From Adineta vaga (lineage: Eukaryota > Animalia > Rotifera), in contig CP075493.1 in NCBI GenBank assembly GCA_021613535.1, positions 16,988,001-17,052,000 of the forward strand: DNA of 64,000 nt, given 5' to 3'. The notes beneath the pieces were generated by a model that did no database searches, was not told where the DNA came from, and saw only the letters and a list, made by a program, of their open reading frames with translations. The position numbers and the translations under genes were made by a program. The number at the start of each line of letters is the position of its first letter. Within the stretch, counting starts at the first letter, position 1. This document shows, one piece after another, positions 4,421 to 62,826 of the stretch.

Positions 4421-4473
4421 GACGAGGATCTGAGTGTGAGTGTGACGATTTTTTTCTCTCGGTGATCCTCATC
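4421..4473. repeat. Degenerate telomere-like inverted-repeat cassette
   Basis: GACGAGGATC-TGAGTGTGAGTGTGA-spacer-GATCCTCATC. The outer inverted arms remain, the C-rich arm is lost. Confidence 0.4.
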
Positions 4474-5700
4474 AAAAACTACATCATCTGATAGAGAATT
4501 AAATTCTGCATCCTACACAATCTTTTCGAAGACCAGCACATGTTTATAGGCGAATCCTGATAAAAAATACTCGACTATGGTGCTAAATTTACCTACGTTA
4601 TTATTCCTCCTTTTATGTTTAAAACATAAAAACGACCATATATTTATTAGTGATATTCTCACAATGCTGATAGATACACTACAGCTTGTTGTTCGATTGA
4701 TAGAAATATTATTGAAAACGGAATAATATTTACTAAAATGAATTATCCACAATATCCGTCATAGTGTCTGAAGTCCAATGAAACGTACTTTTGCAATTGT
4801 TGAAAATTCGTCCTCAAAGTCATTGTGACAAAGACTATGATGCATTTATTTAAAAAATATCACTGAATATTGTAATTATAAAGTAGAGAAACGAAAGATT
4901 TGTTGCAAAACACCATATTGATATTATAATGAATAAAAATATTCTCATACAAGTATTCGTCAACAACGGATCCATCGAAAAGTATGATGCAGTAATTCTA
5001 AAGACTAGTATAACACAAAAAACTACTCGAATATTCAGATGCAATAAAATATCAAAGGAAGTAATACGTAAAGGTATAAGCATTCAGCCGTCACGACGAA
5101 CACAACGCAAAACAAACTAATCATATAGAAAAACGTACGCAAAATACAGAAAAAATAACAGAGAGAGATGCGTAGGACTACGCAGTATATAATATCGAAA
5201 CATTACTGCTATTTTCAAACAGCACAAACGCACAATTCGAGAAAAGGTAAGTACTGTATTACTTTGAAACTATTCAAGATACCTCAGTGATGTAACAAAA
5301 TCAATACGACGTTAAAGTAGTCTTAATAGTATTCATATTAAGTATTGATATAATCCAAACCATCTCTCAGTATAGTAGTACTTGTTCCCTTCCATTATAG
5401 CACCGCTATAAGCGATGTTCGCGACGGTGAAGATACCAAGCACAGATATTCTTGAGGTACAGGGATCTTAGTGGCTGAGTTGTTCTGATGTTGGATCATT
5501 GGACGGTCTAAACGCGTAACATTGCTACACCTCTAGAAGATTAACGTCGTTATTGTTACGTCTCTATGTTCGATATTAATACCTAATAAGTTGGTTGGTA
5601 TTGGTATCGGTAGTATCAATATTGTTATATTTTTATTTCAATTATTCAATTAAAAAATCTTTCAGATAGTTAAAATTCAAGAGAAAATCAACAATAATTG

Positions 5701-8700
5701 ATGTCGTTTATCAGCAGATACGTCGAGCGTCTGATGGGTCATAGCAATCGTGATTCGCAACAAGCAAATAATCAGTATAAATATACAGTGATTGATTTTC
5801 ATTATTCTTTTCATATCTTCTTTTCTTTAGAACATTAGCATCGTGGATACCTGTGTTGGCTATATGTTTCATTTTAATGGTTTTGGGAATCATTGCCGGA
5901 GTGATTGTTCTGTCATTACTTAGCTTATATTTACCGAACAAGGCAGACGATATGGTCATCAATCACAACAGTAATGGTATGAAAATTACTTTTATCTATA
6001 ATTCTTTTGCTCATGTTTCATTTTTTTCAAGTGATAAGAACCATAGACATGGCCCTTGCTACTAATCTGGATGTTAATAACATATTTAATATTGATAATT
6101 ATGATTCAATCGGTAAACAAGTATGTATCTTGCTTCATGACGATTGTGAAATGCATAGTCTCATTTTAGCTGGAACAATATCTTGGATATTCATCTTCAG
6201 TACTAAGTGTTCGATGGGCTGCTTTCAGTAGCAATACATTGACAGCTAGCACCAGTAAGAAGAGAAAACGAGAAATAAGGTTAGTTAATTTATTTGTATT
6301 TTTCTTAATTGAAAAGATATTCATTGTTATTTCTTTTGTTTAGTGATGTGCCTTCATGCATCAACGGCCTTACTGGAACGAACAACAGTGGGGAAAAAAG
6401 TACTAATTTAGGTCTCACAATTCATATAAACAAGTGCCCACAAAGTCATTGCAAAAGTGATCATTGTGTAGAAAAATGTTTACATGCCATAAAAGTTGAT
6501 ATTCAAAACAAACTTGGTTCAAATCCTTTCTCATTCAGTATCACAGCAGCTAATGGAAATGTTCATTCAGTTTCTAGTCAACTTTGCTCTTTTCAACGAC
6601 CCGTTGCAGGTAGAGAAAAAACATTTTGTATCGAAAGAATTTTTGAAGTTGATAACTGTTGATTGAACTCACAATCAACGTAACCATTGGTTACAGAAAA
6701 ATATTTTGTTGTAATATTTGAATTGAGTAATTCTTCTGTATAATAAGATTTGAAGTTACATATACATCGTTATATTATTTTCTTTGACGAGTACATCTGA
6801 ATATTACTGTATCAAAATATGAACAGAAAAGTAAAATAGAAGGTAGTGTGTCATTAGAACATATAAATATATAATGAAACGTATATTATTATATGTTCCA
6901 TAGTAGTTTCAATTTCATTTTTCTCTCAAAATTATCTTTATTTTTTTATTCATCAATTATAGCACCAGCAACTTGTTTTGATGGAATTCAAAATCAAGAT
7001 GAAACTGATATAGATTGTGGAGGATTAATTTGTCCACTACGATGTTCTACTAATCAAAAATGTCAAAGAATATCTGATTGCAGCAAAGCATCTTGTACTT
7101 GTGGTATATGTCAAAGTAAGTACAAAGAAATTTGACGGCATACAAGATGTATTTTATTTGAAATTAAATACTATACTATTCTTGTTTGATTAGTTCCTAC
7201 ATGCAGCGATGGTATTCGTAATCAAGATGAATCAGGCATTGATTGTGGAGGAAAACTATGTAAAAACAAATGTGCGACAAATGTAAATTGCACGATAAAC
7301 TCCGATTGTGAGTCATCTCTATGTGCCAGTAATAAATGCCAAGGTTAGTTTTAAATTACCTATTAGATTTACACTATTTCTATACCTGTTAACTGTTAGA
7401 GTAATTGAATATTTTATTGTATAGCTGTCATATAGTCTGTATATTTCTATCGAAACTGATTTGAATCTACTCTACAGTACACATATGTAAAAGCCTTAAG
7501 TTGAAGGAAAATTGTTTTTTAACCAAAACCTAACAGTACCAATCGTCATAAAGAAAGATATTTACGCTTATTTTAGCACCACAGTGTAACGATTTTATAC
7601 TCAATGGAGATGAAACTGGTATTGATTGTGGAGGCACGCTTTGTTCCAAATGTTCTGCTGGACAAAGCTGTAAAACAACTTCGGACTGTGGCTCTGGATT
7701 GTGTGTTGATGGTACATGCAAAAGTAATAGCAATAACTCTAAGCAAACTCAAAAATATATAACCTGCTTTCACATAATATTCTAGGTCCAACATGTTGTG
7801 ATGGTATCAAGAATGGTCTTGAGACAGACGTTGATTGTGGTGGTCCCTCATGTAAACAATGTGCTGACAATATGTACTGTATGACAAAAACAGATTGCTC
7901 GAGTAAAAAGTGCACAAATAACATTTGTCAAGGTAAAACTATGAAAAACAAAGAAAATATTCGAATAACGTATTCAATTTCAATTTAGTACCAACCTGCT
8001 CTGATGGAATTGTTAATCAAGATGAAATCGGTGTAGACTGTGGTGGACTCATGTGTCCATTATGTGCAGAAGAAGCTTCGTGTCGTCTTACCACTGATTG
8101 TAACAGTGTACTATGTACAAATAGTATTTGTCAAGGTATGTATGCTTTTAACGATAGAAAATCGATTCCACATGTTCTATTATGCCTCTTCACTACGTAG
8201 CTGCCACGTGTCATGATGGTTTGAAAAATGGAGCAGAGATTGATGTAGATTGCGGTGGTCCAATATGTTCATCATGTGGTACTGACAGTACATGTACTAC
8301 TGACAGCCATTGTATAAGTAACAAATGTGTAAACAACAAATGCGAAGGTGACAAACTTGATGAGAAACCTTAATAGCCTTTATTCCCAATGCCTTTTAGC
8401 ACCAAAATATGACGATCTGGTGATGAATGGAGATGAGACCGATATCGATTGTGGAGGATCAAATCCGAAAAAATGTGGTAAAGATAAAAAATGTAAAGTG
8501 ACAGCAGATTGTGATAAAGCATTATGTACAAACGGTTATTGCGAAGGTATGTAGTGTGTTGTTTCAGAATGCAATATCAAACATCTTTTTGCATATAGCT
8601 CCAACATGTAGTGATGGTATTTTGAACGGTGGAGAAGTCCATGTAGATTGCGGCGGTGGTACATGCTCAGGATGTGCGCATGGTAAATCGTGCACCACTG

Positions 8701-11700
8701 GTACCGATTGCTCCAGTAAGCTTTGTGATGCTGCCAGTAAAACTTGTTCAGGTTAGTGGTACCTATTCATCCAATGATTTGCGTTAATTTGAAAAGTTCA
8801 TTTAGTCCCATCATGTCCCGACGGTGTACAAAATGGTGACGAAACTGGATTAGACTGTGGAGGTTCGTGTCTTACAAAATGTAGCTTCGGCGTCACATGT
8901 AAAATAACAACAGACTGCGACAACGCACTATGTGTGAGCGGCACTTGTGCAAGTATGTACGGTGTGGTTCTCCAAAAGTGAAGTATCTCTATTTCCTCAT
9001 ATAGCTCCAACATGCAGTGATGGTATTAAAAACGGAATAGAAGAATTTATCGACTGCGGTGGAACATGTTCGCCATGCACCTATGGTCAACCGTGCACGA
9101 CCGGTGCTACCTGTGCAAGTCAAGTTTGCAGCGGTAGTCCTAAAACTTGCGCAGGTTAGTGATATTAATTAGTCAAAACATTTATGTGAATCGGTTACGA
9201 ACGTTTAGCACCAACATGCCCTGACGGTGTACTAAATGGAGATGAAACAGGACCAGATTGTGGAGGTCCCACATGTGCTACGAAATGTGGTGTTGGTATT
9301 GCTTGTAAAACTACAACCGATTGTGACAAGGCTTTATGTTTCAACGGTGTTTGTGCAGGTATGCAGCATGTTCTTTCTAAAACCATGTGATATTCAATTT
9401 CGCGAATAGCCCAAACATGCAACGATGGGATTCTCAACGGTGCAGAAGTCAAGACAGACTGTGGTGGTGGCACTTGCGTAGGATGCCCAAATAGTGAATC
9501 GTGTAACTCTGCTAGCGATTGTGCAAGCGGGGTTTGTAGTGGTAGTCCTCTAAAATGTGCAGGTTAGCTATACTGATTGTTTGCGATATTTAAGTCTATC
9601 GAATCCAACCATTTAGTACCATCATGTCCCGACGGTGTACTGAATGGAGATGAGACAGGACCAGATTGTGGAGGTCCCACATGTGCTACGAAATGTGGTG
9701 TTGGTATTGCTTGTAAAACTACAACCGATTGTGACAAGGCTTTATGTTTGAACGGTGTTTGTGCAGGTATATAGTGAATTGTTGCGAAGAGCTCAAAATA
9801 TTTGTTTTTCTAAATAGCATCAACGTGCTCTGATAATATTCTGAATGGTGCAGAGACGGATATAGACTGTGGTGGTGGCACTTGTCCAGCATGCGTAAAT
9901 GGAAAACCCTGTTCGACTGGTACGGATTGCTCGAGTAAGGTTTGCAGTGGTTCCCCTAAAACGTGCCAAAGTTAGTAAGATTAGTTTGTTAGAAACCGTG
10001 TAAATATCGGATACCATCATTTAGCACCAACCTGTCCCGATTCGGTCATGAATGGAGATGAGACAGGACCAGAATGTGGAGGTCCCACATGTGCTACGAA
10101 ATGTGGTGTTGGTATTGCTTGTAAAACTACAACCGATTGTGACAAGGCTTTATGTTTGAACGGTGTTTGTGCAGGTATATAGTGAATTGTTGCGAAGAGC
10201 TCATAATATTTGTTTTTCTAAATAGCACCAACGTGCTCTGATAATATTCTGAATGGTGCAGAGACGGATATAGACTGTGGTGGTGGCACTTGTCCAGCAT
10301 GCGTAAATGGAAAACCCTGTTCGACTGGTACGGATTGCTCGAGTAAGGTTTGCAGTGGTTCCCCTAAAACGTGCCAAAGTTAGTAAGATTGGTTTGTTAG
10401 AAACCGTGTAAATATCGGATACCATCATTTAGCACCAACCTGTCCCGATTCGGTCATGAATGGAGATGAGACAGGACCAGACTGCGGAGGTCCTACGTGT
10501 GCTACTAAATGTGGTGTTGGTATTGCTTGTAAAACTACAACCGATTGTGACAAGGCTTTATGTTTGAACGGTGCTTGCGCAGGTATTTAATGTTCTGTTC
10601 TCTGAAAGAATATAACGTTTCTTTTTCGAAATAGCACCAACGTGCTCCGATAATATTCTGAATGGTGCAGAGACGTATACAGATTGTGGTGGTGGCTCTT
10701 GTCCAGCATGTGCAGATGGAAAATCCTGTTCGACTGGCACGGATTGCGCAAGTAAAGTTTGTAGTGGTAGTCCTAAAACTTGTCAAGGTCAGTAACGTAG
10801 TTCGATCTTAGTATTTGTATTATTGGAAAGGATCATTTAGCACCAACGTGCACAGATGGTGTTATGAATGGTGAAGAAACGGATGTTGATTGTGGCGGAT
10901 CTTGCAAGATTTGTGATGTGGGCAAGAAGTGTAAAGTAACGGGTGATTGTAACAACGGATGCAATAACATTGATTGTAATTCGGGCATTTGTGGAAGTGA
11001 GTAAATATGTTTCTAGGAAGGTTCATCGTCTGTATTACAGCTTAAGGATTGATTTGTGATTCGGTCTTTTGCTGATAAAGTTCTTTCATAATATGTGCTC
11101 TTTAAGGGACTGCTGGTGAGAATGATAAAAGGGAGTGGTGAACTTATTGACTGTGGCTGATGTAGAAACGTTTGAGACGGGGTACTTTTTATATATTCTG
11201 TATCGAGTTTCAGAATTACCTAGAGTTTTCAGACGTGCATTGAAGAATTTTTCTTCACATATTAAAACGTTGAAATAGTCGTTCTGACGATGTGGCAGTT
11301 AGATATTTTCAGAAATGCATATGTAGATAATCTTCGTATAATATTCTTTGCTTTTGTTTTGTAATTCAATGTTTTCTTAGCGTTGTGTTTTTTGATAGAT
11401 TTTCCTTGGTTTCGAGAATAGCATTAGCTCAATTTGAGTAAAAGTCCTGTATTAGAAATAGGAGACTTGGCATTAAATGTTGAGTATACATAGTGTATAT
11501 AAATTTGTTATTCGGAACATCAAAGTTTTTACCAAAAGTAGAAAGATTGAAGTTATTCTTGTCAATATAGTGCTTGATTGGGAATAAGCTACAATCCGTT
11601 GTCAAGAGAAAATAGTAATAATTGTGGCCACTAGCGAGATCAAATCTTCTTCGTATGAATAATTGTCATTTCAATTGCCAGAAGTGGCAAAAATATTATG

Positions 11701-17467: not shown

Positions 17468-17499
17468 TAAGACGATGATTAGAAATTATTCTTTTTATA

Positions 17500-22388: not shown

Positions 22389-22465
22389 TAAGGGTGTGAA
22401 TGTGGATATATGTTCTTTTTGTCTTCATGTACACTTACACACATTCACATCCACACTCTCAAGAT
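22389..22465. repeat. Telomere-like inverted-repeat cassette
   Basis: AAGGGTGTGAATGTGGA-spacer-ACACACATTCACATCCACACTCTCAAGAT, between two convergent genes. An extra C-arm-like stretch lies at ~22582-22601. Confidence 0.75.
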
Positions 22466-26943: not shown

Positions 26944-27031
26944 TGAAGGTGTGGGTGTAGGTGAGGTATATTTATTGATCAATCTCACTCACAGCCAAAC
27001 CCAAACCCATCTATCCCACTCTTCTTACAAG
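26944..27031. repeat. Telomere-like inverted-repeat cassette
   Basis: TGAAGGTGTGGGTGTAGGTGAG-spacer-CTCACTCACAGCCAAACCCAAACCCAT... Confidence 0.7.
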
Positions 27032-38419: not shown

Positions 38420-40627
38420 ATGCAATTGTTAACTATCGTTTTTTTTACCGTGCTCATCTTCATCAACACTTTCGCATATCCAGTTACTTATGATCAAGTT
38501 CGTGGTATTCCCTACCGTGTCTCGTATGATCATCGAGCAATTACCATCAATGGCAATCGCACACTCCTCTTTTCAGGAGTAATTCATTATCCCCGATCAA
38601 CACCAGCCATGTGGCCATACTTGATGTCGAAGGCTAAAGAACAGGGTCTCAATACAATACAAACTTATGTATTTTGGAACATACATGAACAAAAACGTGG
38701 AACATATGATTTTAGTGGACGTGCTAATTTGAGTCTATTTCTTCAAGAAGCTGCTAATGCTGGATTGTTCGTTAATCTGAGACTAGGTCCATATGTGTGT
38801 GCTGAATGGGACTATGGTGCTTTGCCGGTATGGCTTAATAATATTCCTAATATTGCATTTCGTTCCAGTAATGATGCCTGGAAGAGTGAAATGAAACGAT
38901 TTTTATCGGATATTATTGTCTATGTTGACGGATTTCTTGCTAAAAATGGTGGACCAATTATTCTTGCTCAAATTGAAAATGAATACGGTGGAAATGATAG
39001 GGCTTATGTCGATTGGTGTGGTAGTTTGGTATCGAATGATTTTGCATCAACACAAATCCCATGGATTATGTGCAACGGCCTTGCGGCAAATTCAACTATT
39101 GAAACATGCAATGGATGTAATTGTTTTGACGACGGTTGGATGGATAGACATCGTCGAACTTATCCCAATCAACCGTTACTTTTCACGGAAAATTGGGGTT
39201 GGTTTCAAGGGTGGGGTGAGGGTTTAGGTATCCGAACACCCGAAGATCTTGCCTACTCAGTTGCTGAATGGTTTGCTAATGGTGGTGCTTACCATGCATA
39301 TTATATGTGGCATGGGGGTAATCATTATGGTCGAACAGGTGGATCAGGTCTGACAACGGCATACTCTGATGATGTTATTCTTCGCGCTGATGGTACACCG
39401 AACGAGCCGAAATTTACTCATTTAAATCGTTTACAACGTCTTCTTGCTAGTCAGGCACAAGTACTATTGAGTCAAGATTCTAATCGATTATCAATACCCT
39501 ACTGGAATGGAAAACAATGGACAGTAGGTACGCAACAGATGGTCTACTCATATCCTCCATCTGTTCAGTTTGTTATTAATCAAGCTGCATTTTCATTATT
39601 TGTTCTTTTCAATAAACAAAATATTTCAATAGCTGGTCAATCTGTTCAAATTTATGACTATAATGAACATCTACTGTGGAACAGTGCCGATGTGAGTGGT
39701 ATTTCCAGAAATAATACTTTTCTTGTACCGATTGTAGTGGGTCCACTTGACTGGCAAGTCTACTCGGAACCATTCACATCTGACTTACCAGTCATCGTGG
39801 CATCGACACCCTTAGAACAACTTAATCTAACTAATGATGAAACCATCTACCTATGGTATCGTCGTAATGTCTCACTTAGTCAACCATCCGTACAAACAAT
39901 CGTTCAGGTACAAACACGTCGAGCAAATAGTTTACTCTTTTTTATGGACCGACAATTTGTGGGTTATTTCGATGATCATTCACATACACAAGGTACAATT
40001 AATGTTAATATTACACTTAATCTTTCACAGTTTCTTCCCAATCAACAATATATTTTTGAAATTCTTTCGGTTTCGCTTGGTATTGACAATTTTAATATAG
40101 GACCAGGTAGTTTTGAATATAAGGGTATAGTTGGCAATGTGTCTCTCGGAGGACAATCATTAGTCGGTGACGAAGCGAGCATCTGGGAACATCAAAAAGG
40201 TTTATTTGGTGAAGCGCATCAGATTTATACTGAACAAGGTTCAAAAACAGTTGAATGGAATCCTAAGTGGACGACAGTTATCAATAAACCAGTAACCTGG
40301 TTTCAAACTCGCTTTGATCTAAATCATCTTGCTCGGGAAGATCTCAATGCTAATCCAATCTTGCTCGATGCATTTGGTTTTAACCGTGGTCATGCTTTTG
40401 TTAACGGAAATGATATCGGTCTCTATTGGTTGATTGAAGGTACCTGTCAAAATAACTTATGTTGTTGTCTACAAAATCAAACTAATTGTCAACAACCCAG
40501 TCAACGCTATTATCACATTTCATCTGATTGGCTCAAGCCTACAAACAATTTGTTAACCGTTTTTGAAGAGATTGGCGCATCATCACCCAAATCTGTGGGT
40601 CTTGTTCAACGAATTATTAACACCTAG
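38420..40627 (+). CDS. GH35 beta-galactosidase, secreted, intronless
   Basis: SGVIHYPRS, IQTYVFWNIHE, RLGPYVCAEW, GGPIILAQIENEYG (acid/base), FTENWGWF (nucleophile), YYMWHGGNHYG, GHAFVNGNDIGLYW, PSQRYYH. Signal peptide from ATG 38420. Confidence 0.95.
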   Translation: MQLLTIVFFTVLIFINTFAYPVTYDQVRGIPYRVSYDHRAITINGNRTLLFSGVIHYPRSTPAMWPYLMSKAKEQGLNTIQTYVFWNIHEQKRGTYDFSGRANLSLFLQEAANAGLFVNLRLGPYVCAEWDYGALPVWLNNIPNIAFRSSNDAWKSEMKRFLSDIIVYVDGFLAKNGGPIILAQIENEYGGNDRAYVDWCGSLVSNDFASTQIPWIMCNGLAANSTIETCNGCNCFDDGWMDRHRRTYPNQPLLFTENWGWFQGWGEGLGIRTPEDLAYSVAEWFANGGAYHAYYMWHGGNHYGRTGGSGLTTAYSDDVILRADGTPNEPKFTHLNRLQRLLASQAQVLLSQDSNRLSIPYWNGKQWTVGTQQMVYSYPPSVQFVINQAAFSLFVLFNKQNISIAGQSVQIYDYNEHLLWNSADVSGISRNNTFLVPIVVGPLDWQVYSEPFTSDLPVIVASTPLEQLNLTNDETIYLWYRRNVSLSQPSVQTIVQVQTRRANSLLFFMDRQFVGYFDDHSHTQGTINVNITLNLSQFLPNQQYIFEILSVSLGIDNFNIGPGSFEYKGIVGNVSLGGQSLVGDEASIWEHQKGLFGEAHQIYTEQGSKTVEWNPKWTTVINKPVTWFQTRFDLNHLAREDLNANPILLDAFGFNRGHAFVNGNDIGLYWLIEGTCQNNLCCCLQNQTNCQQPSQRYYHISSDWLKPTNNLLTVFEEIGASSPKSVGLVQRIINT

Positions 40628-40777: not shown

Positions 40778-40849
40778 ACATCTTGAGAGTGTGAGTGTGG
40801 GTGTGGGTAAGGGTGATAGTTGTATCTGACGCCCACACCCTCAAGATGT
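40778..40849. repeat. Telomere-like inverted-repeat cassette (best-preserved ends)
   Basis: ACATCTTGAG-AGTGTGAGTGTGGGTGTGGGTAAGGGTG-spacer-CCCACACC-CTCAAGATGT, with perfect 10-bp outer inverted ends. Confidence 0.9.
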
Positions 40850-41434
40850 ATATTATCTCTTCGTAAGTAATATCTATTCAAAAGAAAGTTAACTTTAGAA
40901 AAAAACGTCGACAATAGTGGCCATTCATGTTTCCATTCTATTCACAACATCTGCATTATCAAGTAAAAAACTTTTTCTAACTGAGTAAATATAACTGTTC
41001 AACTAAGTCTGATTTTTGACCGTGCGTATGATATAATAGAAAATCATATTTCTTATTTTTTTGAGTACAAATGCATCCATAAAAAAATCTTTCTCTATTC
41101 TATAGCAGCAACACAGCTGCTCAGCGAACATATTCGAGGCCAATGAGCTACTGTTTTCAATGATGGATATGATATAATAGAAAGTCATATTTCTCCTTTT
41201 ATGTTGTGCAATTACATTCCTGATTAAATGTTTCTCCACTCCAGTGTTGCAAGTCAGCTGTTTAGCGAGAATGCTCAAAGGTAGCAAAGTATTCATTTCA
41301 ATAAGATGTCTGAAAAAGAAAAAAAAATTGTAATGCTACTTCACCAGTGCTCGTTGCATCTATAAAAGTATCTTTTTTTTCTTTTGAGACTGCAGTTTTT
41401 TTAGTGGATCTGCTAGTGCTTATTCGATTATATA

Positions 41435-44645: not shown

Positions 44646-44660
44646 ACACACCCTCAAGAT
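44646..44660. repeat. Half cassette (C-rich arm only)
   Basis: ACACACCCTCAAGAT, matching the right end of the 40778-40849 copy. Confidence 0.6.
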
Positions 44661-45045: not shown

Positions 45046-45124
45046 GTGGGTACGAATGTGGGTATATATCTAATATGGACAAAACGCCAGTATATACCTC
45101 ACACCCACACCCACATCCACCCTC
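45046..45124. repeat. Telomere-like inverted-repeat cassette
   Basis: GTGGGTACGAATGTGGGTATATA-spacer-TATATACCTCACACCCACACCCACATCCACCCTC. Confidence 0.75.
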
Positions 45125-47540: not shown

Positions 47541-47618
47541 CATGACAGTGTGGGTGTGAGTGAGGGTAGATGCGTGCAAGTCAGTGTCCCAATTCACTCA
47601 CACCCACACCCTGAAGAT
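47541..47618. repeat. Telomere-like inverted-repeat cassette
   Basis: CATGACAGTGTGGGTGTGAGTGAGGG-spacer-TCACTCACACCCACACCCTGAAGAT. Confidence 0.85.
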
Positions 47619-47889
47619 TAAGCCTATGAAGTTCGTTGTAACACCTTTTTTTAGAGTGTTGTTTCGTGTGTTCTTGAATCATATAACGTACTTGCTCTCT
47701 TTGCTTCGAATCGAATGAAATATTTGCATAGTGGACTTGTATAAATTTGTCAGTTGTTTAGGGACGCTAGATCCAAGAAGCAACTTCTAAAGTGTGCCTT
47801 CAGATTAACACTATATTGGGATAGCGTTTTTGTTCCAAGGATACTTCTGCCGTTTGAACATCAATCATTGAATGCGTTTATATACTTGA

Positions 47890-51606: not shown

Positions 51607-51658
51607 CATCTTGACGGATGTAGATGAGAGTGTAGAATCTACACATGCATCCTTTCAG
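51607..51658. repeat. Degenerate telomere-like inverted-repeat cassette
   Basis: CATCTTGACGGATGTAGATGAGAGTGTAG-AAT-CTACACATGCATCCTTTCAG. Confidence 0.55.
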
Positions 51659-55229: not shown

Positions 55230-55575
55230 GTTCGATGACGTTCAGGTACAAAACTATAAGGATCATTTGGACCCACAAGATCAATATCATAATGAATCGA
55301 ATAAACATCAGCTTGGACTATTGTGCCTATTAAGATAAATGAGACGATTAATGGTTTAATGACCTTTTTTCAATGAAATCTTCGTTAAGTTTATATTATT
55401 TGAACAATCAAATAAAAACTTATTTACTTTTTTCAATATTGATTCCTTGTACAATTGTATTATCAGTAGCGCGTCTTTGAGTAGCAATATTAGCAATGGA
55501 ATACATTCTCAATACTTCCGAAATGACCATATCTATATATGGTAATTGTGAAACAATTTCATCTTGAAGTTTTTT
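55230..55575 (-). pseudogene. Cytochrome P450 internal fragment
   Basis: KKLQDEI..QLPYIDMVISEVLRMY (K-helix ExxR), an intron, then GTIVQADVYRIHYDIDLVGPNDPYSFVPERH (PERF-like). No N-terminus and no heme-Cys motif. Confidence 0.8.
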
Positions 55576-55614
55576 TAGTGTAGGTGTGTGTGAACAAGAG
55601 ACCCACATCCTCAA
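55560..55614. repeat. Degenerate telomere-like inverted-repeat cassette
   Basis: CATCTTGAAG...AGTGTAGGTGTGTGTG-spacer-ACCCACATCCTCAA, abutting the P450 fragment. Confidence 0.65.
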
Positions 55615-55754
55615 AAAGAGTTCGTATATTTACTCAACTTTGAAATATTAATAAGATTTATTTGAAAAGAGCTTTATTGTCAAAATAATGATAAAGATAA
55701 AGCAAAAAGGTATGAAAATTTATTAAGAAAATCTTGTTAATAGATATTCATCAC

Positions 55755-57731
55755 TCAATTTGGTAATTGTAGACGAAAATTATCAAATTGAGCATAATCC
55801 CAAGATGATCCAATCGCAGCCCATCCTGAATGGCTAGATGCACTTAATTCACATCGGCCAACTACATTACCGTTAATATATACTATTGAATGATCTTGTA
55901 GAACAACAAGTGTCAATCGATACCAAGTACCAGCGACAATGGAGATGCTTTCAGAAGCGATTGGATTTGTAATCTTTGTACTATCACTTATCTGCCAAGA
56001 TCCATTATTAGTTGTATTGATGCTGAATACAATACCGGGACTTCCAGTGCCACAACCTCCTCTTGAAACTCCTAGAGCAACAAATGCAGTTCCACTCTTC
56101 TCAATCATAACATCGACACTAACATTCAAAGGTTGTTTCCAACTAGAATTACCAATAATAGAATATGGATAGATTGCTTCGTCACACCAACTAATAGTTG
56201 CTTCAGGTACCATCTGTCTCATAGTTTTGCCACGGGTACTTGCTGTATCTACAATTTCCCATGAACCTGTCTGATCAGAAAAATACGATGCTTCACTGGA
56301 TATTTGATATTTGTCAAAATTATCTGCATATGGTAGTGGAAAAGGTTGGGAAGCTGGAGCTTCGTATGTACCTTTTGTACCATTAATTGTTGAAACAGTA
56401 TAAAGTACACCAACTGGTAGTTGAAGTGTAAATTTTCCATCATTCAAGGCAATTAATCCTTTGTAGGTGAATGCTTGTTTTACATCCAATATGTTGAGAT
56501 CCGTGAAAAAAACATATAGTTGAGTTACATGATGAAAAGAATTGTCGAGTTGAAAAGTTGCTGTTTGATTAGTTGTAGTATAGTGTACCGTACTGGAATG
56601 TGCACATTGTGAGCGATCACGATTCATCGTTTCGATGATAATAGTCAATTGTTGACCAGTTGGATCAGTTAATGATACATAACTACCACCATTATCTAAC
56701 AATCCAACGCCTGATCCATGTTTTAAAAAAGACCATCCAGCTTTTGTAAATTGTCCCCAATGTGCTGATACCCATAGAAGTCGTCCAATTTGATAGTGTC
56801 CTGACCATGGTTCATTGGCACGTAGTATACCAACGCCACTCCATGGTAATCCGTCGTAAAATGAGTTAATTAAATCCCAAGCAATAGTTGCAGTTAAATT
56901 CGCACGAACATAATTTTGATTCAGAGATCTTGCCCAACATAGAGAACCCGTATCATAATCAAGTGACATATCTTCACTTGACCATTGAAGCTTGTTAAGA
57001 GCAGCACAGTCTGATGCTATAGATGAACCAACATAGTGCGAACCGACAACATCAACAGCAGCTGCCCATTCGGAATCGCTAGCTAAAGTTTTACAAACAT
57101 CCCATCCTGAGTCATGACCAACAATCTTTGTTTTGAGTCCAGCTGTCACGATTGCTGCCTTGAGTGCCAGTGTATAGCCTTTGTTCCAATTACGTTCATT
57201 CCAAATTCCAACGTAATCAATATCAAGATTGTAATATTTCTTAGCACCTAATAACCAATTCATCGTATATCGAACAGTACTATTCGTCCAAGGCGACTTT
57301 TTTCCTTCACCAACCCAACCAGGAAATCCCCAACTGAGAGCATACAAAGTAATGTTTGGATTTCGTCGTTTTGCTTCCACCATGGTACTCCATTCATAAC
57401 CTCGTTGGTAGTTTTCATCATCAGCTGTATGCATATGGGACGGTTCTGTTCCATCGGTCGATTGTGCATCGCCACCAATTTCAACTTTAAGTATGTGTAA
57501 TGAAGCACCAAAACCTGGTAAAAATAAGTAATCCATTATTTGACTATACCACTTGCTATCATAGTCTGGAAGTAAACGTGTAACACAACCACCACCACTC
57601 AATCCACCAACACCATCTAAAGGTTTACCTAATCCAGTTGCTTTGCTCACATCATATGTGAAAGCTGCATTCGACATTGAAAAAAGTGTTACGAGAACAC
57701 TGATCACAAACATTAAATCAACCAGTATCAT
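55755..57731 (-). CDS. GH59 galactocerebrosidase-like glycosidase, secreted, intronless
   Basis: DGVGGLSGGG..RLLPDY, FGASLHILKVEIGGDAQSTDGTEPSHMH, NYQRGYEW, YALSWGFPGW, GIWNER (acid/base), WSSED (nucleophile), and a C-terminal lectin domain ending AQFDNF. Confidence 0.95.
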   Translation of the reverse strand: MILVDLMFVISVLVTLFSMSNAAFTYDVSKATGLGKPLDGVGGLSGGGCVTRLLPDYDSKWYSQIMDYLFLPGFGASLHILKVEIGGDAQSTDGTEPSHMHTADDENYQRGYEWSTMVEAKRRNPNITLYALSWGFPGWVGEGKKSPWTNSTVRYTMNWLLGAKKYYNLDIDYVGIWNERNWNKGYTLALKAAIVTAGLKTKIVGHDSGWDVCKTLASDSEWAAAVDVVGSHYVGSSIASDCAALNKLQWSSEDMSLDYDTGSLCWARSLNQNYVRANLTATIAWDLINSFYDGLPWSGVGILRANEPWSGHYQIGRLLWVSAHWGQFTKAGWSFLKHGSGVGLLDNGGSYVSLTDPTGQQLTIIIETMNRDRSQCAHSSTVHYTTTNQTATFQLDNSFHHVTQLYVFFTDLNILDVKQAFTYKGLIALNDGKFTLQLPVGVLYTVSTINGTKGTYEAPASQPFPLPYADNFDKYQISSEASYFSDQTGSWEIVDTASTRGKTMRQMVPEATISWCDEAIYPYSIIGNSSWKQPLNVSVDVMIEKSGTAFVALGVSRGGCGTGSPGIVFSINTTNNGSWQISDSTKITNPIASESISIVAGTWYRLTLVVLQDHSIVYINGNVVGRCELSASSHSGWAAIGSSWDYAQFDNFRLQLPN

Positions 57732-58647
57732 TAATCTTTCTGAAAATGCATGTTTACTAAAATATATACATAAAAAGGTTGTCAGTTTTAGATTATTTTT
57801 CTTTATAACTATGAAAACAAGTTCTGTTTTAAGTCTTACCTATGTTATCAAATATGAATACTTTAAATATAGAACTCCCAAGACATGAGCCGAAGGACAG
57901 AATAAAGATAAAAGTACAGAGTATATGATACAAGAGGTAAGTATGGGTATCTCTTTCCTGCACTAAAAAAAAAGAAAGATAATAATGTATATAACAATGA
58001 TAAATTATTCTCATAAAATATTTTTCAATTTGATTGTTAATCATAAAATGAGTAAATATTCCAAATTTTCTCTTACCCTCATTCGTAAAAAAAAGCGAAA
58101 AAGATGAAGTTTGATGTTAGATTTTGTATATGACAACCCCTTACATACTTATTTTAATTCAAATAGAAAGTTTCCTGATTTTTAAAAGAAAATTAGAGAG
58201 AGAAATATACAATCTTTTTGATCAGACAGAATTCAAACAAGAGTGAAGCACGATCGCCATTCTGATCGAATATCTGATATAATCAATAAGCTATATTTAC
58301 GTATTTATCAATGGGAAATGTAATAATATAAAAGAAATAACTAAACGTCATATTTAGATGTTATCTTTAGTAGGAATACTTATCATCTTGTTATGCATTG
58401 TTGTTAAATACTTTATTACATTCATTAGTGATATTTTGGCCTCGTGATTTGGGGAAAATTTATCGTTATTCTAAATGATTCTAAAGAGGATCACAGTTAT
58501 GGTGTTACATTACCTAATTATGTAACAGTATTTTATGAACAACTACCACTATGTACTAAGTTATGGGTTAAAAGTCAACCAATCAAATCACTTGATAATT
58601 ATTCATCGATTCGTGTTCATGCCTATGAAAGTGCACAGTGGTGTAAC

Positions 58648-58696
58648 TGAGGGTGGGTGTGGGTACTACATTTATCTAACACCAACACTCACACCT
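58648..58696. repeat. Telomere-like inverted-repeat cassette
   Basis: TGAGGGTGGGTGTGGGTA-spacer-ACACCAACACTCACACCT. Confidence 0.75.
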
Positions 58697-58768
58697 TGCT
58701 GAGAAATTTCTATAAATCTTAGGATAACATTTGATTTGAGTCTTTTCACTGGATCATGATGCAGAGTA

Positions 58769-58836
58769 TATTCCTAAACCTACCTGATGAGTCCCTTTAG
58801 CAAGGACGAAACGCATCGTAGTGTAGCTTAGGAATA
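58769..58836 (+). ncRNA. Minimal type I hammerhead ribozyme
   Basis: Core CTGATGA (58784-58790), stem II GTCC...GGAC (58791-58807), GAAAC (58808-58812), short loop GCATC, cleavage triplet GTA (58818-58820), and stem I closed by TATTCCTAA/TTAGGAATA. Confidence 0.8.
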
Positions 58837-58879
58837 ATTATATTCTATTAAACACACGCACACACACATTCAAGATCCT

Positions 58880-59150
58880 TGTTATTTGTTTAAGTAACTA
58901 TCTTTGTTTTTATACAAATACCTTGGCTGATCTATAGTATAATAATGTGAGTTCATCTGACATCATAAATAAAAGTTCGGATAGAATTGTAATTGAAAAT
59001 TTTCTAACAGCTGTAGCTGATGCACATTCTCTTTTTTTTTTATTTCCACCAATCTCATTTTATATCTATACATTAACATCAAATATATTTAGAGATGAAT
59101 TTATTTCTCTTGTAAAAAAACTTCTTTTGTTGGAAATATTTCTTTATTAA
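58880..59150 (+). pseudogene. C-terminal fragment of an orphan 7TM receptor
   Basis: KSSDRIVIENFL...ISFYIYTLTSNIFRDEF is typical of TM6-TM7/helix 8 in such receptors; the 5' part is missing. Confidence 0.55.
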
Positions 59151-60120
59151 TCATTTAATTATACCAATAGATAGAAATAGAACATAGAGAGCAACTTTTA
59201 ACTATCAGTATTTCAATATTGTCTCGTCAAATTGTTCTGTTTTTTATTTCATTATTAATTAAGTCTTAATAAATTCCATGTTGACAAAATTTCTTGCCAA
59301 TGTCGATGTGAATGTGCGTATAGATCTGTCTGGACTACACATAAAGCATTACGATGATTTTCTAGAAGATTCTGCACTTCTGACATGAGAGATATTTATC
59401 TAAATATTCCTTACGAGTTTATCATTCTTATTGATAATATGTGATTATATACGTATAAGAGCAGAACAAAAAAGGCAAAACAAATTGAAATTGAAAATTA
59501 CTGTTATCATTTCATTTTCTAAAATGATTTTCACGAAATATCTTCGTGTTTTTATAAATCTTCAAACTACTTTGTTTTGATTTGATCCTATAAACTAATC
59601 ATAAAATCGTTTCCAAATCGACTCTAATCTCAAAACTATGTTGGCGAGGGCGCTCTAAATCGTTCTGATTTCAATAGGATAGAGGCTTATTTCGTAAACC
59701 TATGGACATTCTTCACGTGAATGATAAAGACTACTCTTTTGTCTCATTTGCATCGTTTTTCTTTTTTCCTTTATATGTCGAGGAAAAAAACAAGTAAACC
59801 ATTTTTTATTCAAACCGGGTAATAATTTGTATTCGTAGGTAAAAAATTATGGTAGATTAGAATTTTTCGAAGATCTTCGCAAAATCGTAAAGAAAATTGT
59901 CCAGGTTCACAGATCCGATAACCGATTTACATTGGGTTCCGTCGACAAAAATTTACTCACTTAACTTGTTATAAATTCTACGAGCGTTACTTCTAGCTTT
60001 ATATTGTATTATAATCCCATGATCACATATCATCACTGAATATTATATATGAGATCTTATTTTTTAGATATTTAGTTAAACGAATTGTGATTGATTATAA
60101 GACGAGGAAATAAAACAAAG

Positions 60121-62677
60121 ATGAATGAATTGATGAGATCATTCGATGAAATTCTTCGTCGAGAAATTATTGAAAGAAATTATTTAGTAATATATCTTGA
60201 CAGGAATATTAATCAATTTAATGAAGATTTCTTAAAAGAAGTGAAAAATTATTTTCATAAAATTGAAATCTTTGATAATATTGATCAATGTTTGAAATTA
60301 TTCAATGAAATGAAAAATATCAAAGTCTCTTTGATTACTAATGAAATGCATGGAAAACATATTTTACCTTCTATTCATCATTATTCTCAATTGAATTCAA
60401 TTTATTTCTTATCTCAAAATCAATTCAATAATAATTTATGGTCAAAAATCGAATATTCATCTCCCAAACTCAATTCTATATCCAATCACTTAAAATTACA
60501 AAGAAAACAAAATAATGCCAATTCAATTTCTATAAGTTTCCTTCCATTTAATCGTGAAATATCTGAAATAAATATAAATGAATTAGAATCTTCTTATATG
60601 TATACACAAATATTCAAAGAAATTCTTCTTAATATAAATTATAATAATAATGATTCAATTCAAATTTTAACAAATTATTGTCGTGAAATTTATCCAAATT
60701 ATCACAATGTTATCGATGAATTTGAAAATAAATATACATCTGATAAATCCATTTAGTGGTATACAAAAGAACCATTTATTTATGAATTACTTAATCAAGT
60801 ATTGAGAAATTTACAAGGTTCTATTCTTATTTCTATGGGAATTTTTATTCGAAATTTACATGAACAAATTCAACAATTGTATGAAGAACAAATGAAAAAA
60901 TTGTAAAGAAAATCATTTTATTGTTTATCGTGGACAAGGTTTAACATTAAATGATTTTGAAAAACTTCAAAATACAATTGATGGTTTAATTTCTTTCAAT
61001 AATTTCTTATCAACAAGTCGAAATCGAAATATTTCTTTATTATTTGCTGAAAGTTCTTCATCGAAATCAAATACAATTGGCATTGTTTTTCAAATAAATA
61101 TTGATCTATCTATTGTATCAACACCTTGTGCCGATATTCATAATTATAGTCATTTTCAATCTGAAGAAGAAATTCTCTTTTCTATGCATACAATATTTCG
61201 TATTAAGGAAATTATTTCACTTAATGAAAACAAAACAATTTATCAAGTTAATCTTCTATTAACAAATAATGATGATCCACAACTTGCTCTTCTTACAGAT
61301 CATATTCGTAATGAAACTAATCGTTCAAATCATTCCGAAAAAATTGCACATTTATTAATTAAAATTGGAGAATTTAAGAAATCGGAAGAAATTTATCAAA
61401 ATTTACTTGAAGAAACATTGGATTTAAATAAAAAATCACATTATTTTAATCAACTTGGTTATATTAAAGATGAACAAGGAGATTACAGAAAAGCTATTGA
61501 ATATTATCAACAAGGACTTGATATCAAACAAATCATTTTACCATCAAATGATCCTTTATCAGCGATTACTTTGAATAATATTGGTGTTGCCTTTAGAAAT
61601 TTAGGAGAATATTTCAATGCTCTTTCTTTCTATGAAAAAGCACTTGAAATTCGAAAAGAAGTTCTTCCGTCAAATCATTCTGACATTGCTCAATCTTACA
61701 ATAATATTGGTGCGGTACATCGAGATCAATATGATTATTCCAAAGCATTGTTATTTTATGAAAAAGCACTTACAATCCGAGAAGAAATTCTTCCGAAAAA
61801 TCATCCAGATATTGCAGAATCTTATAATAACATTGGTATAGTATATCACGATATAGAAGAATATTCCAAAGCACTTTTATTTTATAAAAAATCTCTTGAA
61901 ATTCGGCAAATAATTCTTCCAATAAATCATCCGGATATTGGTCAATCCTACAATAATATTGGTGTCACATATAATAGTATGAGTTTGTCTTCTGAAGCAC
62001 TTTTATCTCATGAAAATGCACGAAATATTTTTGAGAAAATTCTTTCTTCAACTCATCCAACATTGGCAACTTGTTATAATAATATTGGTGATGTGTATCG
62101 AGATCAAAATGATTACTCAAATGCAATTCTATTTTATGAAAAATCATTAGCAATTCGTGAAAAGATTTTTCCATCAGTTCATCCATGTATCGGTCAATCT
62201 TATAATAATTTTGGTAAAGTATATAAATGTACAAAACAATTTTCCAAGGCATTATTATTCTTCGAAAAAGCGTGTCCAATTTTAGAAGAAATCTTTTCAT
62301 CGAAAGGTCTCATTTTGGCTATTCTATATAACAATATAAGTGAAATACATCGAATGATGAAAGATAATCAAAAAGCACTTTTTTATGCGGAAAAATCATT
62401 TGAAATCGCGAAAAATCTTTCTTCAGATAATCATTCTGAATTCATTGATATTTTGAAAAATATTGCTTTAGTTTATTCCAATGTGAATGATTATTCACAA
62501 GCTCTTTTATACTTTAACTATGCATTCGATAAATTACAATGTTTATTACCTGCGGATCAAAACCAACCTCAACATCTAAAAAAACTTATTGAAACGACGG
62601 AAAACAATATAAAAATGATCTGTTTCAATTTCAAAAATACAACTGACTTTTTTGCGATGCTTTCTTCCTATATCTGA
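60121..62677 (+). pseudogene. ADP-ribosyltransferase (ART) + TPR protein, two lesions
   Basis: ART motifs I*WYTKEPFIY (TAG at 60754-60756), VYRGQG, FNNFLSTSRNR and FQSEEEILFSM (R-S-E type), with a frameshift near 60900, followed by ~10 kinesin-light-chain-type TPRs (HPDIAESYNNIG). Confidence 0.85.
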
Positions 62678-62748
62678 CATTAATTCTATTCACAATTTGA
62701 AAACGTAATTGTAACTTTGTTCACCAGTAGAGACGTCATTCCTAATAA

Positions 62749-62826
62749 CATGAGGGTGTGGGTGTGGGTGTGGGATGAACACTAGCTAATCATCTACACC
62801 CACACCCCGGTGTCCTCATAAGATGT
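62749..62826. repeat. Telomere-like inverted-repeat cassette
   Basis: CATGAGGG(TGTGGG)3-ATGAACACTAGCTAATCAT-CTACACCCACACCCC...CCTCATAAGATGT. Confidence 0.88.

What the first reader, a model, noticed from the sequence alone, without database searches (positions are those of the whole stretch)
4421..62826. Dispersed family of telomere-repeat palindromic cassettes with unique spacers that partitions the region into gene-sized modules
Seen directly: about 12 two-armed copies (22389, 26944, 30373, 33911, 35911, 40778, 45046, 47541, 51607, 55560, 58648, 62749) plus degenerate or half copies (4421, 17447, 22582, 44646, 58852). The shared form is (CA)TCTTGAG-GGTGTGGGTGTGGG..spacer..CCCACACCCACACC-CTCAAGAT(G). 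The G-rich arm always comes first and the C-rich arm second, the polarity of an end-to-end telomere fusion. The arms are conserved but every spacer differs, and no copy lies inside an intact ORF. From 22 kb onward one occurs roughly every 2-5 kb. Established: TGTGGG is a bdelloid telomeric repeat, and ordinary MITE copies share their interior sequence. Inference: this is a sequence-defined site rather than a plain MITE. Options are (a) a hairpin recombination site like integron attC, assembling gene cassettes, (b) a chromosome-breakage/telomere-seeding or fusion junction, so each inter-cassette segment reads CCCACA...gene(s)...TGTGGG like a concatenated mini-chromosome, or (c) paired sites for a telomere-repeat-binding protein acting as boundary or terminator. 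I know of no description of this arrangement.
Basis: partly seen in the sequence, partly recalled or inferred. Interest (0 to 1): 0.93.

Follow-up and report, generated by a model that had tools for sequence, protein, structure and literature searches.

The report
Telomere-repeat hairpins from Athena-type retroelement tails
The short telomere-repeat palindromes that sit between genes in this rotifer subtelomere are real and very numerous, but they are best read as miniature inverted copies of the 3' tail of the telomere-attaching Athena/Terminon retroelements, left where DNA ends were healed or joined, not as an integron-like cassette system.

Summary
The window (a 100.8-Mb, six-contig genome with TGTGGG telomeres; its proteins carry Adineta vaga names) has about 12 G-arm/loop/C-arm palindromes between 22 and 63 kb. 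The opposite polarity never occurs: 21 vs 0 in 244 kb, 87 vs 0 genome-wide.

"Every spacer differs" is wrong. Loops fall into families; one core (TACATCTATCTAAC) has about 190 copies. Arm lengths are very variable and uncorrelated. The outer motif CATCTTGAG fades gradually outward, and there is no target-site duplication.

Elsewhere in the genome, ribozyme-bearing tails also end in TCAAGAT.

I therefore read each hairpin as two inverted, extremely 5'-truncated retroelement tails. This is a miniature of the known inverted insertion architecture of Penelope-like elements. Whether they mark joined DNA ends or spread as tiny non-autonomous elements is unresolved.

They avoid ORFs and are enriched just downstream of stop codons; one lies 20 nt beyond a mapped mRNA end. 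Adineta steineri has the same elements. The integron-like reading is not supported. First-stage notes record the same arrays in four other windows of this genome. I rate it a new variant of a known kind, of moderate to high interest.

The parts
22392..22464 (.). Hairpin: G-arm 22392-22405, 39-nt loop, C-arm 22445-22458, then CTCAAGAT. It lies 55 bp after the stop of a + ORF and about 200 bp from the stop of a - ORF.
   Evidence: DNA fold z -2.4
26944..27010 (.). Degenerate hairpin: G-arm 26944-26966, C-arm 26986-27010.
   Evidence: fold z -1.4
30373..30479 (.). Hairpin with unequal arms: TCTTGAG plus G-arm 30375-30397, C-arm 30412-30479 (68 nt). It lies 43 bp after the stop of the GTPase-like ORF, with AATAAA just upstream.
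   Evidence: fold z -4.0
33920..33969 (.). Hairpin: G-arm 33920-33941, C-arm 33957-33969.
   Evidence: fold z -1.4
35909..35963 (.). Hairpin: G-arm of five perfect repeats 35909-35941, short C-arm 35948-35963; the loop ends in CTGAC.
   Evidence: fold z -3.9
40778..40850 (.). Best-preserved copy: CATCTTGAG, G-arm 40787-40815, core ATAGTTGTATCTGAC, C-arm 40828-40844, CTCAAGATG. It lies 159 bp after the GH35 stop.
   Evidence: fold z -5.0
44646..44660 (+). Solo tail, not a hairpin: ACACACCC followed by TCAAGAT and preceded by ..CGATTAAC. It resembles a minimal retroelement 3' terminus.
45046..45122 (.). Hairpin with a degenerate G-arm; C-arm 45097-45122.
   Evidence: fold z -2.3
47546..47620 (.). 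Hairpin: G-arm 47546-47567, C-arm 47594-47614, then CTGAAGAT.
   Evidence: fold z -4.5
51607..51652 (.). Very degenerate candidate copy (CATCTTGA, a decayed G-arm, a short C-arm), about 150 bp beyond the stop of the - strand TPR ORF.
   Evidence: fold does not pair the arms
55560..55618 (.). Degenerate hairpin: CATCTTGAAG, G-arm 55577-55592, C-arm 55599-55613. It begins about 20 nt beyond the 3' end of the GH59 mRNA contig. One haplotype lacks 55276-55612.
   Evidence: fold z +0.6
55633..57759 (-). Extent of the GH59 (galactocerebrosidase-like) transcript contigs. The module between the hairpins at 55577 and 58648 holds this one gene plus about 900 bp of upstream DNA.
   Evidence: records 1 and 6
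58648..58696 (.). Hairpin of the TACATCTATCTAAC core family: G-arm 58648-58666, C-arm 58679-58696. The 48-nt unit recurs at other loci with different flanks.
   Evidence: (depth spike and loose ends)
58697..58876 (+). 5'-truncated 3' end of an Athena/Terminon-type Penelope-like element: hammerhead ribozyme 58768-58843, C-rich tail 58852-58868, then TTCAAGAT. It abuts the C-arm of the hairpin at 58648.
   Evidence: (HH9, E 4e-5, full model, CUGAUGAG..CGAAAC core)
62750..62826 (.). Hairpin: G-arm 62750-62776, C-arm 62791-62809, with the outer CATGAGG / CCTCATAAGATG pair. It lies 72 bp after the stop of the TPR ORF.
   Evidence: fold z -4.1

Best explanation
Each hairpin is a miniature inverted pair of 3' termini of an endonuclease-deficient Penelope-like retroelement of the Athena/Terminon type.

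The unit read on one strand is: (CATCTTGAG)(G-rich repeats) - short core - (C-rich repeats)(CTCAAGATG). The C-rich arm plus CTCAAGATG is the same terminus that follows the hammerhead ribozyme in full retroelement 3' ends. The core corresponds to the 13-30 nt that lie between the ribozyme and the tail. The G-rich arm is a second tail in inverted orientation, truncated to the tail alone. So the two truncated 5' ends meet in the middle and the two 3' ends point outward. That is the known head-to-head insertion architecture of Penelope-like elements, shrunk to 50-110 bp.

Inferred mechanism: free DNA 3' ends (chromosome ends or double-strand breaks, frequent in this desiccation-tolerant animal) prime reverse transcription on the tail of such an RNA. 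Synthesis starts at a variable point within the last nine or so bases, which gives the ragged outer motif. Slippage or existing telomeric repeats give variable arm lengths. The two extended ends are then ligated head to head. Copies of one core family may also spread as tiny non-autonomous elements mobilised in trans.

Shown: the anatomy, the polarity, the core families, the ragged ends, the lack of target-site duplications, the shared terminus with ribozyme-bearing tails, the intergenic placement, and presence in a second Adineta species. Inferred: the RNA intermediate, the priming by two ends, and any effect on neighbouring genes.
For: (1) Polarity is exclusive: 21:0 locally and 87:0 genome-wide.

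(2) Window 58768-58843 matches Hammerhead_HH9 over the full model (E 4e-5) with a canonical core. It is followed by a C-rich tail and TTCAAGAT.

(3) Genome-wide, about 26 loci carry CTGATGAG..CGAAAC, then a 13-31 nt leader, then a C-rich tail, against 0 for the control. In at least six ribozyme-type loci of different leader families the tail is followed directly by TCAAGAT, against 0 for the control. This is the same motif that bounds the hairpin arms.

(4) Leaders end in CTGAC, TTAAC or TAGAC next to the tail, as hairpin cores do. One leader (TTGGGATGCTCTGACT) closely resembles a hairpin core (TTGTGGCTATGCTCTTAAC).

(5) Conservation of the outer motif falls stepwise with distance from the arm: G .91, A .75, G .61, T .59, T .55, C .38. 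This is expected for a variable start of templated synthesis or nibbled ends, not for transposase-defined termini.

(6) No target-site duplication: observed 3.25 vs null 3.66.

(7) Among 52-55 copies with an identical 14-nt core, both arms vary from about 8 to more than 60 nt. Arm lengths are uncorrelated.

(8) Published anatomy of Penelope-like elements fits: an inverted 5'-truncated copy adjacent to insertions, tail extensions, and non-autonomous derivatives that share 3' ends (PMC8557442); palindromic inverted junctions ascribed to self-priming (PMC3846280); Athena/Terminon tails of (ACACCC)n or (TCACCC)n next to a hammerhead, with host genes captured between units (PMC6431247).

(9) Telomeric repeats and Athena fragments were found at deletion breakpoints in A. 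vaga lines (PMC13564844).

(10) Strict hits cluster near contig ends.

(11) The same architecture, outer motif and one core family occur in Adineta steineri.
Against: No hairpin contains a hammerhead ribozyme. None of the 55 copies of the best-studied core has a ribozyme upstream, so a parent element with exactly that leader was not found. This favours self-propagation of the hairpin unit, or loss of the parent.

Only one ribozyme-bearing 3' end lies among about 20 hairpins in 134 kb.

The similarity between cores and leaders was judged by eye on short strings, not by a statistical model.

A subfamily shares a fixed inner junction (GTGTTAGTAT before the core), which independent joining events would not give.

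No RNA intermediate, reverse transcriptase gene or de novo event was observed.

[quoted passage not shown] 2017), so I do not know the published 3' termini in detail.
Confidence: 0.55

Rival explanations
1. A family of short foldback or MITE-like DNA transposons whose terminal inverted repeats happen to be telomere-like, moved by a cut-and-paste transposase.
For: Inverted arms, conserved internal cores in multi-copy families, dispersed copies with unrelated flanks. The genome holds other foldback repeats, such as window 4275-4603, and TIR transposons dominate its TE content (PMC8494291).
Against: No target-site duplication. The outermost bases are the least conserved, the reverse of transposase-defined ends. 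The arms of one copy differ up to more than ten-fold in length. The terminus is identical to that of ribozyme-bearing retroelement tails. No transposase is linked: the hAT and PIF1 fragments at 0-4 kb lie outside the hairpin zone.
Confidence: 0.12
2. Pure telomerase healing: both ends of a break, or of a free DNA fragment, received TGTGGG repeats from telomerase and were later fused end to end, with no retroelement involved. The region would then be a concatenation of former mini-chromosomes.
For: Head-to-head polarity without exception. Arm lengths are independent, including a 199-nt tract. Neotelomeres have been reported at A. vaga breakpoints (PMC13564844).
Against: Random fusions would not give loop families with up to 190 copies, nor a shared 9-nt motif between unique DNA and repeats on both sides. 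That motif is shared with hammerhead-bearing tails.
Confidence: 0.1
3. The hairpins are retained because they work for the host. One possibility is bidirectional 3'-end or termination elements: on either strand a converging gene reads a GU-rich stretch first, like the downstream element of polyadenylation sites. Another is paired sites for a telomere-repeat-binding protein that insulates neighbouring genes. This is compatible with any origin.
For: 6 of 19 copies lie within 200 bp downstream of a facing stop codon, against 1.9 expected among intergenic positions (P about 0.009). The GH59 mRNA contig ends 20 nt before the hairpin. AATAAA is found 9 times upstream of the arms against once for its complement. 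Three A. steineri hairpins lie 26, 149 and 260 bp after stops. Roughly one hairpin per gene boundary from 22 kb onward, though this rests on my own rough gene models.
Against: Half of the copies have lost pairing and arm identity, with no sign of compensatory change. Some copies lie 800-1400 bp upstream of divergent genes (58648). Poly(A) signals are not enriched against random windows (10 vs 7.6 +/- 2.6). Relatives of the same genes elsewhere function without hairpins. Tolerance of insertions just past a poly(A) site would give the same bias.
Confidence: 0.1
4. An integron-like system: the hairpins are attC-type recombination sites at which gene cassettes are inserted and excised.
For: Imperfect palindromes between single genes. 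Neighbours of GH35 and GH59 differ between Adineta species.
Against: No recombinase among the large ORFs. Genes lie on both strands, with their own upstream regions. Arm lengths are variable and pairing has decayed. Copies of a 330-bp unit and of GH35 and GH59 elsewhere do not carry hairpins at matching boundaries. There is no evidence of circles or of excision.
Confidence: 0.02

Closest known systems
3' ends of Athena / Terminon elements (endonuclease-deficient Penelope-like retroelements of bdelloid rotifers)
   Same: [quoted passage not shown] Subtelomeric location. Attachment to free DNA ends. Host genes between units (PMC6431247; PMC8557442). In this genome their tails end in the same TCAAGAT motif as the hairpin arms, and one such end abuts a hairpin in the window.
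   Different: The hairpins have no reverse transcriptase and no hammerhead ribozyme. They are 50-110 bp long, consist of two inverted tails, and outnumber recognisable ribozyme-bearing ends about 20 to 1 locally.
Inverted (head-to-head) 5'-truncated copies and 'tail' extensions of Penelope-like element insertions
   Same: The truncated 5' ends meet in the middle and the 3' ends point outward. Junctions are palindromic. Non-autonomous derivatives keep only the 3' end (PMC8557442; PMC3846280).
   Different: Known cases are hundreds to thousands of bases long, flank a coding copy and, for elements with an endonuclease, carry target-site duplications. Here truncation is nearly total, nothing is enclosed and there is no duplication.
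Head-to-head interstitial telomeric repeats left by telomere-telomere fusion (e.g. human 2q13; my own knowledge), and neotelomere scars in A. vaga (PMC13564844)
   Same: The G-strand repeats are followed by C-strand repeats, and the two tracts are of independent length.
   Different: Fusion relics are single events with no conserved sequence between or beside the tracts. Here there are conserved core families and a conserved outer motif, in what I estimate to be hundreds to thousands of copies.
MITEs and foldback transposons
   Same: Short, non-coding, inverted arms, multi-copy families, intergenic.
   Different: No target-site duplication, ragged outer ends, arms of unequal and hypervariable length.
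Endonuclease-independent LINE-1 insertion at double-strand breaks and dysfunctional telomeres (cited in PMC5537684; details from my own knowledge)
   Same: It works alike: a free DNA 3' end primes reverse transcription, there is no target-site duplication, and it is associated with breaks and chromosome ends.
   Different: A different retroelement class. No inverted twin structure or telomere-repeat tail is involved.
Integron attC sites
   Same: Imperfect palindromes between genes.
   Different: No integrase, no common gene orientation, no conserved pairing geometry.

Membership tests
Athena/Terminon (EN-deficient Penelope-like element) | Encodes a Penelope-type reverse transcriptase | tested here: not met
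   Pfam scan of all 18 ORFs of 150 aa or more in the window found no reverse transcriptase. The hairpins are 50-110 bp and non-coding.
Athena/Terminon (EN-deficient Penelope-like element) | Hammerhead ribozyme motif immediately upstream of the 3' tail | tested here: not met
   Met only by the fragment at 58768-58868. No hairpin has one: the whole-window Rfam scan gives a single hammerhead, there are none in 70 kb distal, and 0 of 55 copies of one core family have one.
Athena/Terminon (EN-deficient Penelope-like element) | Short reverse-complement telomeric repeats at the 3' terminus | tested here: met
   Every C-arm (and every G-arm on the other strand) is such a stretch. The terminus ..CCCTCAAGAT is shared with ribozyme-bearing tails.
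Athena/Terminon (EN-deficient Penelope-like element) | Location at or near chromosome ends | tested here: met
   The window lies 1.1 Mb from the end of an 18.1-Mb contig. Strict hits cluster near contig ends.
Penelope-like inverted insertion architecture | Two copies head to head, 5' ends truncated and adjacent, 3' ends outward | tested here: met
   The tail motif points outward on both sides in 26 of 64 arms with 5 or more matching bases. The core lies on one side of the centre only.
MITE / foldback DNA transposon | Target-site duplication flanking the element | tested here: not met
   The best flanking direct repeat averages 3.25 nt, against 3.66 +/- 0.19 for mismatched flanks.
MITE / foldback DNA transposon | Precisely defined, conserved outermost terminal bases | tested here: not met
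   Conservation decays outward from 0.91 to background over 9 nt.
Integron attC / gene cassette | Adjacent tyrosine recombinase (integrase) and a common cassette orientation | tested here: not met
   No recombinase domain in the window's large ORFs. Genes lie on both strands.
Telomere-telomere fusion relic | Two telomeric tracts abutting with no templated sequence between or beside them | tested here: not met
   Conserved core families and a conserved outer motif.
Functional terminator / downstream polyadenylation element | Effect on 3'-end formation of the neighbouring transcript | not testable with these tools
   Positional evidence only: 20 nt beyond one mRNA contig end and enrichment downstream of stops.

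The most novel reading that the evidence does not exclude
The hairpins are the joints of a reverse-transcriptase-templated 'cap-and-join' process. Any free DNA end, including ends of foreign or relocated gene-sized fragments, is first extended on the tail of an Athena-type RNA and then ligated head to head to another capped end. On this reading, bdelloid subtelomeres are literally assembled piece by piece, with one scar per joint. That would give a concrete molecular route for the integration of horizontally acquired genes, and for reshuffling of gene order between Adineta species. A further possibility is that a hairpin just past a gene's poly(A) site makes read-through transcripts of that gene substrates for the same reverse transcriptase.
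Probability: 0.3. Interest if true: 0.85.

Novelty: new variant of a known kind. Interest (0 to 1): 0.6.

Why it matters
Bdelloid rotifers are known for surviving massive DNA breakage, and their subtelomeres are packed with foreign genes. How loose DNA ends are stabilised and stitched in is an open question.

Interspersed telomeric repeats, and Athena/Terminon elements with genes captured between them, are already published. What I did not find in the papers I could search is three things together: that the commonest form of these repeats is a strictly polarised hairpin, that it has conserved cores, and that it has the retroelement's own terminal motif on both sides.

If each hairpin records the healing and joining of two ends, these scars form a countable, sequence-defined record of break repair and gene capture. 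From the local density I estimate hundreds to thousands per genome. The idea can be tested directly in irradiated or desiccated lines.

If instead they are tiny non-autonomous retroelements, they would be an unusually small parasite of a telomere-attaching reverse transcriptase.

Either way, the integron analogy that made the finding look categorically new does not hold.

Tried and rejected
(1) Hairpins as hammerhead ribozymes or any Rfam family: no hit except the single HH9 match at 58768-58843.

(2) The core as the 3' end of a longer conserved element: rejected. All 55 copies of one core have only a G-arm and then unique DNA on that side.

(3) The haplotype deletion 55276-55612 as an 'empty site' or 'module' polymorphism: rejected. 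The left breakpoint lies inside a unit that is contiguous in five paralogous copies, so it is a microhomology (GACCCAC) deletion.

(4) Hairpins at equivalent positions around paralogues and orthologues. The GH35 paralogue on C6 at 7.2 Mb has none. The GH59 paralogue on C6 at 0.88 Mb has hairpins at other distances. The A. ricciae and unnamed-species loci have none. Homology with other species ends within about 100 bp of the coding sequence, so orthology of positions cannot be tested.

(5) An age gradient towards the telomere: my ungapped arm-identity measure is confounded by phase shifts in long arms, so I draw no conclusion.

(6) Poly(A) signal enrichment upstream of the arms: not significant against random windows, only strand-asymmetric.

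(7) A metagenome scan for the core found three unrelated chance matches.

(8) Intron or introner reading: the cores carry GTGAGT-like and CTRAC-like strings, but the one transcript I could map ends before the hairpin. Not pursued.

(9) A run-off of reverse transcription at the ribozyme cleavage site as the origin of the fixed core length: only roughly consistent. One core family keeps the two or three bases before the expected cut, so I do not claim it.

(10) Literature: five full-text searches found no description of the palindromic form. The two primary papers on Athena and Terminons are not held, so prior description cannot be excluded.

Full report
**What is there.**
The window is C1:16,988,001-17,052,000 of a 100.8-Mb, six-contig assembly, about 1.1 Mb from the end of an 18.1-Mb contig. 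The TGTGGG repeat, the six contigs and the names attached to its proteins identify it as the chromosome-level Adineta vaga genome (PMC8494291).

Copies at 45046 and 51607 are visible only by eye. The arm pattern occurs 16 times against 0.01 expected.

In 244 kb centred on the window there are 21 G-then-C pairs and no C-then-G pair. Genome-wide, a strict pattern gives 87 hits against none for the reversed control, and the hits cluster near contig ends. Contigs from two other DNA runs of different studies cover two of the hairpins without differences, so they are not assembly artefacts.

None lies between -82 kb and +22 kb of the window's coordinates. The window therefore crosses the inner border of a hairpin-rich subtelomeric zone.

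The loops are not unique. Within my 32 sampled copies, loops share 7-mers twice as often as shuffled loops do. They fall into recognisable families (..GAAGAAGATAT....TGATCGATGC....GGCTATRCTCTTAAC, TACATCTATCTAAC).

The last of these, together with the first ten bases of the C-arm, occurs 190 times in the genome with up to three mismatches, against 2 for the control. All 55 copies with a perfect 14-mer have a G-arm on one side and a C-arm on the other.

The arms, in contrast, are the variable part. Among copies with an identical core they run from about 8 to more than 60 nt, and one local C-arm is 199 nt. The two arms of a copy are uncorrelated in length (rho 0.28). Only six of the twelve window copies still fold clearly better than shuffles, so pairing is not being maintained.

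**The ends.**
Its conservation falls step by step with distance from the arm (0.91, 0.75, 0.61, 0.59, 0.55, 0.38, then background).

Flanks show no target-site duplication. Ragged outer ends, no duplication and unequal arms are not what a cut-and-paste transposon leaves. They are what a variable start of templated synthesis, or end-joining of nibbled ends, leaves.

**The link to a known retroelement.**
It is followed by TTCAAGAT.

A hammerhead next to a short run of reverse-complement telomeric repeats is the published signature of the 3' end of Athena/Terminon elements. These are the endonuclease-deficient Penelope-like retroelements that attach to exposed chromosome ends in bdelloids (PMC6431247; PMC8557442).

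Genome-wide I found about 26 loci with the ribozyme core, a 13-31 nt leader and a C-rich tail. In at least six ribozyme-type loci with different leaders the tail runs directly into TCAAGAT (controls 0). So the hairpin arm plus outer motif is the terminus of these elements.

The leaders end in CTGAC, TTAAC or TAGAC against the tail, as hairpin cores do. At least one leader is close to a hairpin core at the same offset. This comparison was by eye and needs a proper test.

**Reading the anatomy.**
With the tail motif pointing outward on both sides, and the leader-like core on one side of the centre, a hairpin is two tails head to head. One is truncated to leader plus tail, the other to the tail alone.

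Penelope-like insertions are known for exactly this arrangement at larger scale: an inverted 5'-truncated copy next to the insertion, palindromic junctions ascribed to self-priming, 'tail' extensions, and non-autonomous derivatives that keep only the 3' end (PMC8557442; PMC3846280).

Elements of this class need a free 3' end to prime on. A double-strand break or two loose fragments offer two such ends. Twin priming followed by ligation would give the observed polarity, independent arm lengths, ragged outer motif and lack of duplication.

The arrangement at 58648-58876 fits. [quoted passage not shown] Telomeric repeats and Athena fragments have also been reported at deletion breakpoints in A. 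vaga lines (PMC13564844).

**What remains open.**
No copy of the TACATCTATCTAAC core has a ribozyme. One subfamily shares a fixed inner junction. Both point to propagation of the hairpin unit itself, as a tiny non-autonomous element, rather than to independent formation each time. I cannot decide between 'scar' and 'mini-element'; both may apply.

Only one ribozyme-bearing end lies among about 20 hairpins locally.

**Relation to genes.**
The modules hold ordinary bdelloid subtelomeric genes: a GTPase-like ORF, PAN/CAP, GH35, NHL, TPR and GH59. 16 of 19 hairpins avoid ORFs of 100 codons or more. Six lie within 200 bp downstream of a facing stop codon, against 1.9 expected for intergenic positions (P about 0.009).

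Contigs from two runs that are probably RNA (their kind is not on record; they cover only the gene) place the GH59 transcript at 57759-55633. It ends 20 nt before the hairpin, and the hairpin is absent from those contigs. AATAAA is strand-biased upstream of the arms but not enriched against random windows.

By my rough gene models, about 12 of 15 gene boundaries from 22 kb onward carry exactly one hairpin. This is suggestive of regularity, but my gene models are not independent of the hairpins. A role as a GU-rich downstream element or boundary is possible. So is simple tolerance of insertions just past a poly(A) site.

**Cassette mobility.**
I found no support. There is no recombinase. The GH35 paralogue in the chromosome interior has no hairpin. 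The copies of a 330-bp unit next to the hairpin at 55577 have hairpins at non-matching places. The closest A. ricciae GH59 sits among core genes without hairpins. The one haplotype difference at a hairpin is a microhomology deletion.

**Other species.**
Around the GH35 orthologue of Adineta steineri there are at least six hairpins of the same polarity. They carry the same outer motif and the ATATCTTCTTCAC core family, and three of them lie 26-260 bp after stop codons. The family is thus not private to A. vaga. The neighbours of GH35 differ between the two species, but flanks are too diverged to place breakpoints.

**Verdict.**
The feature is real, abundant and strictly polarised. It is not an integron analogue and not a plain MITE. 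It is best explained as a product of Athena/Terminon tails. I rate it a new variant of a known kind. Whether it has been described before I cannot say, because the two primary papers were not available. First-stage notes flag the same arrays in four other windows of this genome and Athena-like 3' ends in two more; none had been followed up.

Noticed in passing
At least 39 loci match it across all contigs, including chromosome interiors, and a 99% identical copy of the surrounding 1.3 kb lies 26 kb upstream. It is a different repeat family from the telomere-repeat hairpins.
   Followed up: partly
window 87-1657 and 2680-3675: ORFs with PIF1-like helicase domains (possibly a Helitron-type remnant), and an ORF with a weak match to the hAT dimerisation domain. 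Both lie outside the hairpin zone.
   Followed up: no
window 36632-37310: A repeat of about 0.7 kb with 88-98% identical copies on at least four contigs (C1, C2, C3, C4). It lies between the hairpin at 35909 and the GH35 gene; a further repeat at 37477-38205 has 82% identical copies on C1 and C5. Not classified.
   Followed up: no
C1:16,932,800-16,960,600 (loci L011-L014; 55 to 27 kb before the window): A large inverted duplication: the same series of telomere-like arms appears in mirror order at about -55 to -50 kb and -33 to -27 kb of window coordinates.
   Followed up: no
window 55276-55612, 58851-58929, 59086-59206: Structural differences between haplotypes or strains, seen in contigs of two DNA runs: a 337-bp deletion with GACCCAC microhomology that removes the hairpin at 55577; a 79-bp difference that starts at the retroelement tail at 58852; and a 121-bp stretch replaced by CACGTA.
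   Followed up: partly
window 55755-57731 (-) and locus L035 10001-11986: The galactocerebrosidase-like GH59 gene is intronless and subtelomeric here. Its closest Adineta ricciae relative (85% identity) sits among core genes (histones, cornichon, formyltransferase) with no synteny, which suggests relocation of the gene in one lineage.
   Followed up: partly
window 38384-40627: The intronless GH35 beta-galactosidase is conserved across bdelloid genera. Its nearest non-rotifer relatives in the search are plant and amoeba (Acrasis) enzymes at about 43%, so it may be an old horizontally acquired gene.
   Followed up: no
locus L045 186-421 (Adineta steineri): A hairpin with a G-arm of about 215 nt made of mixed TGAGGG and TGTGGG repeats and a 19-nt C-arm. 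This is the most extreme arm asymmetry I saw.
   Followed up: no
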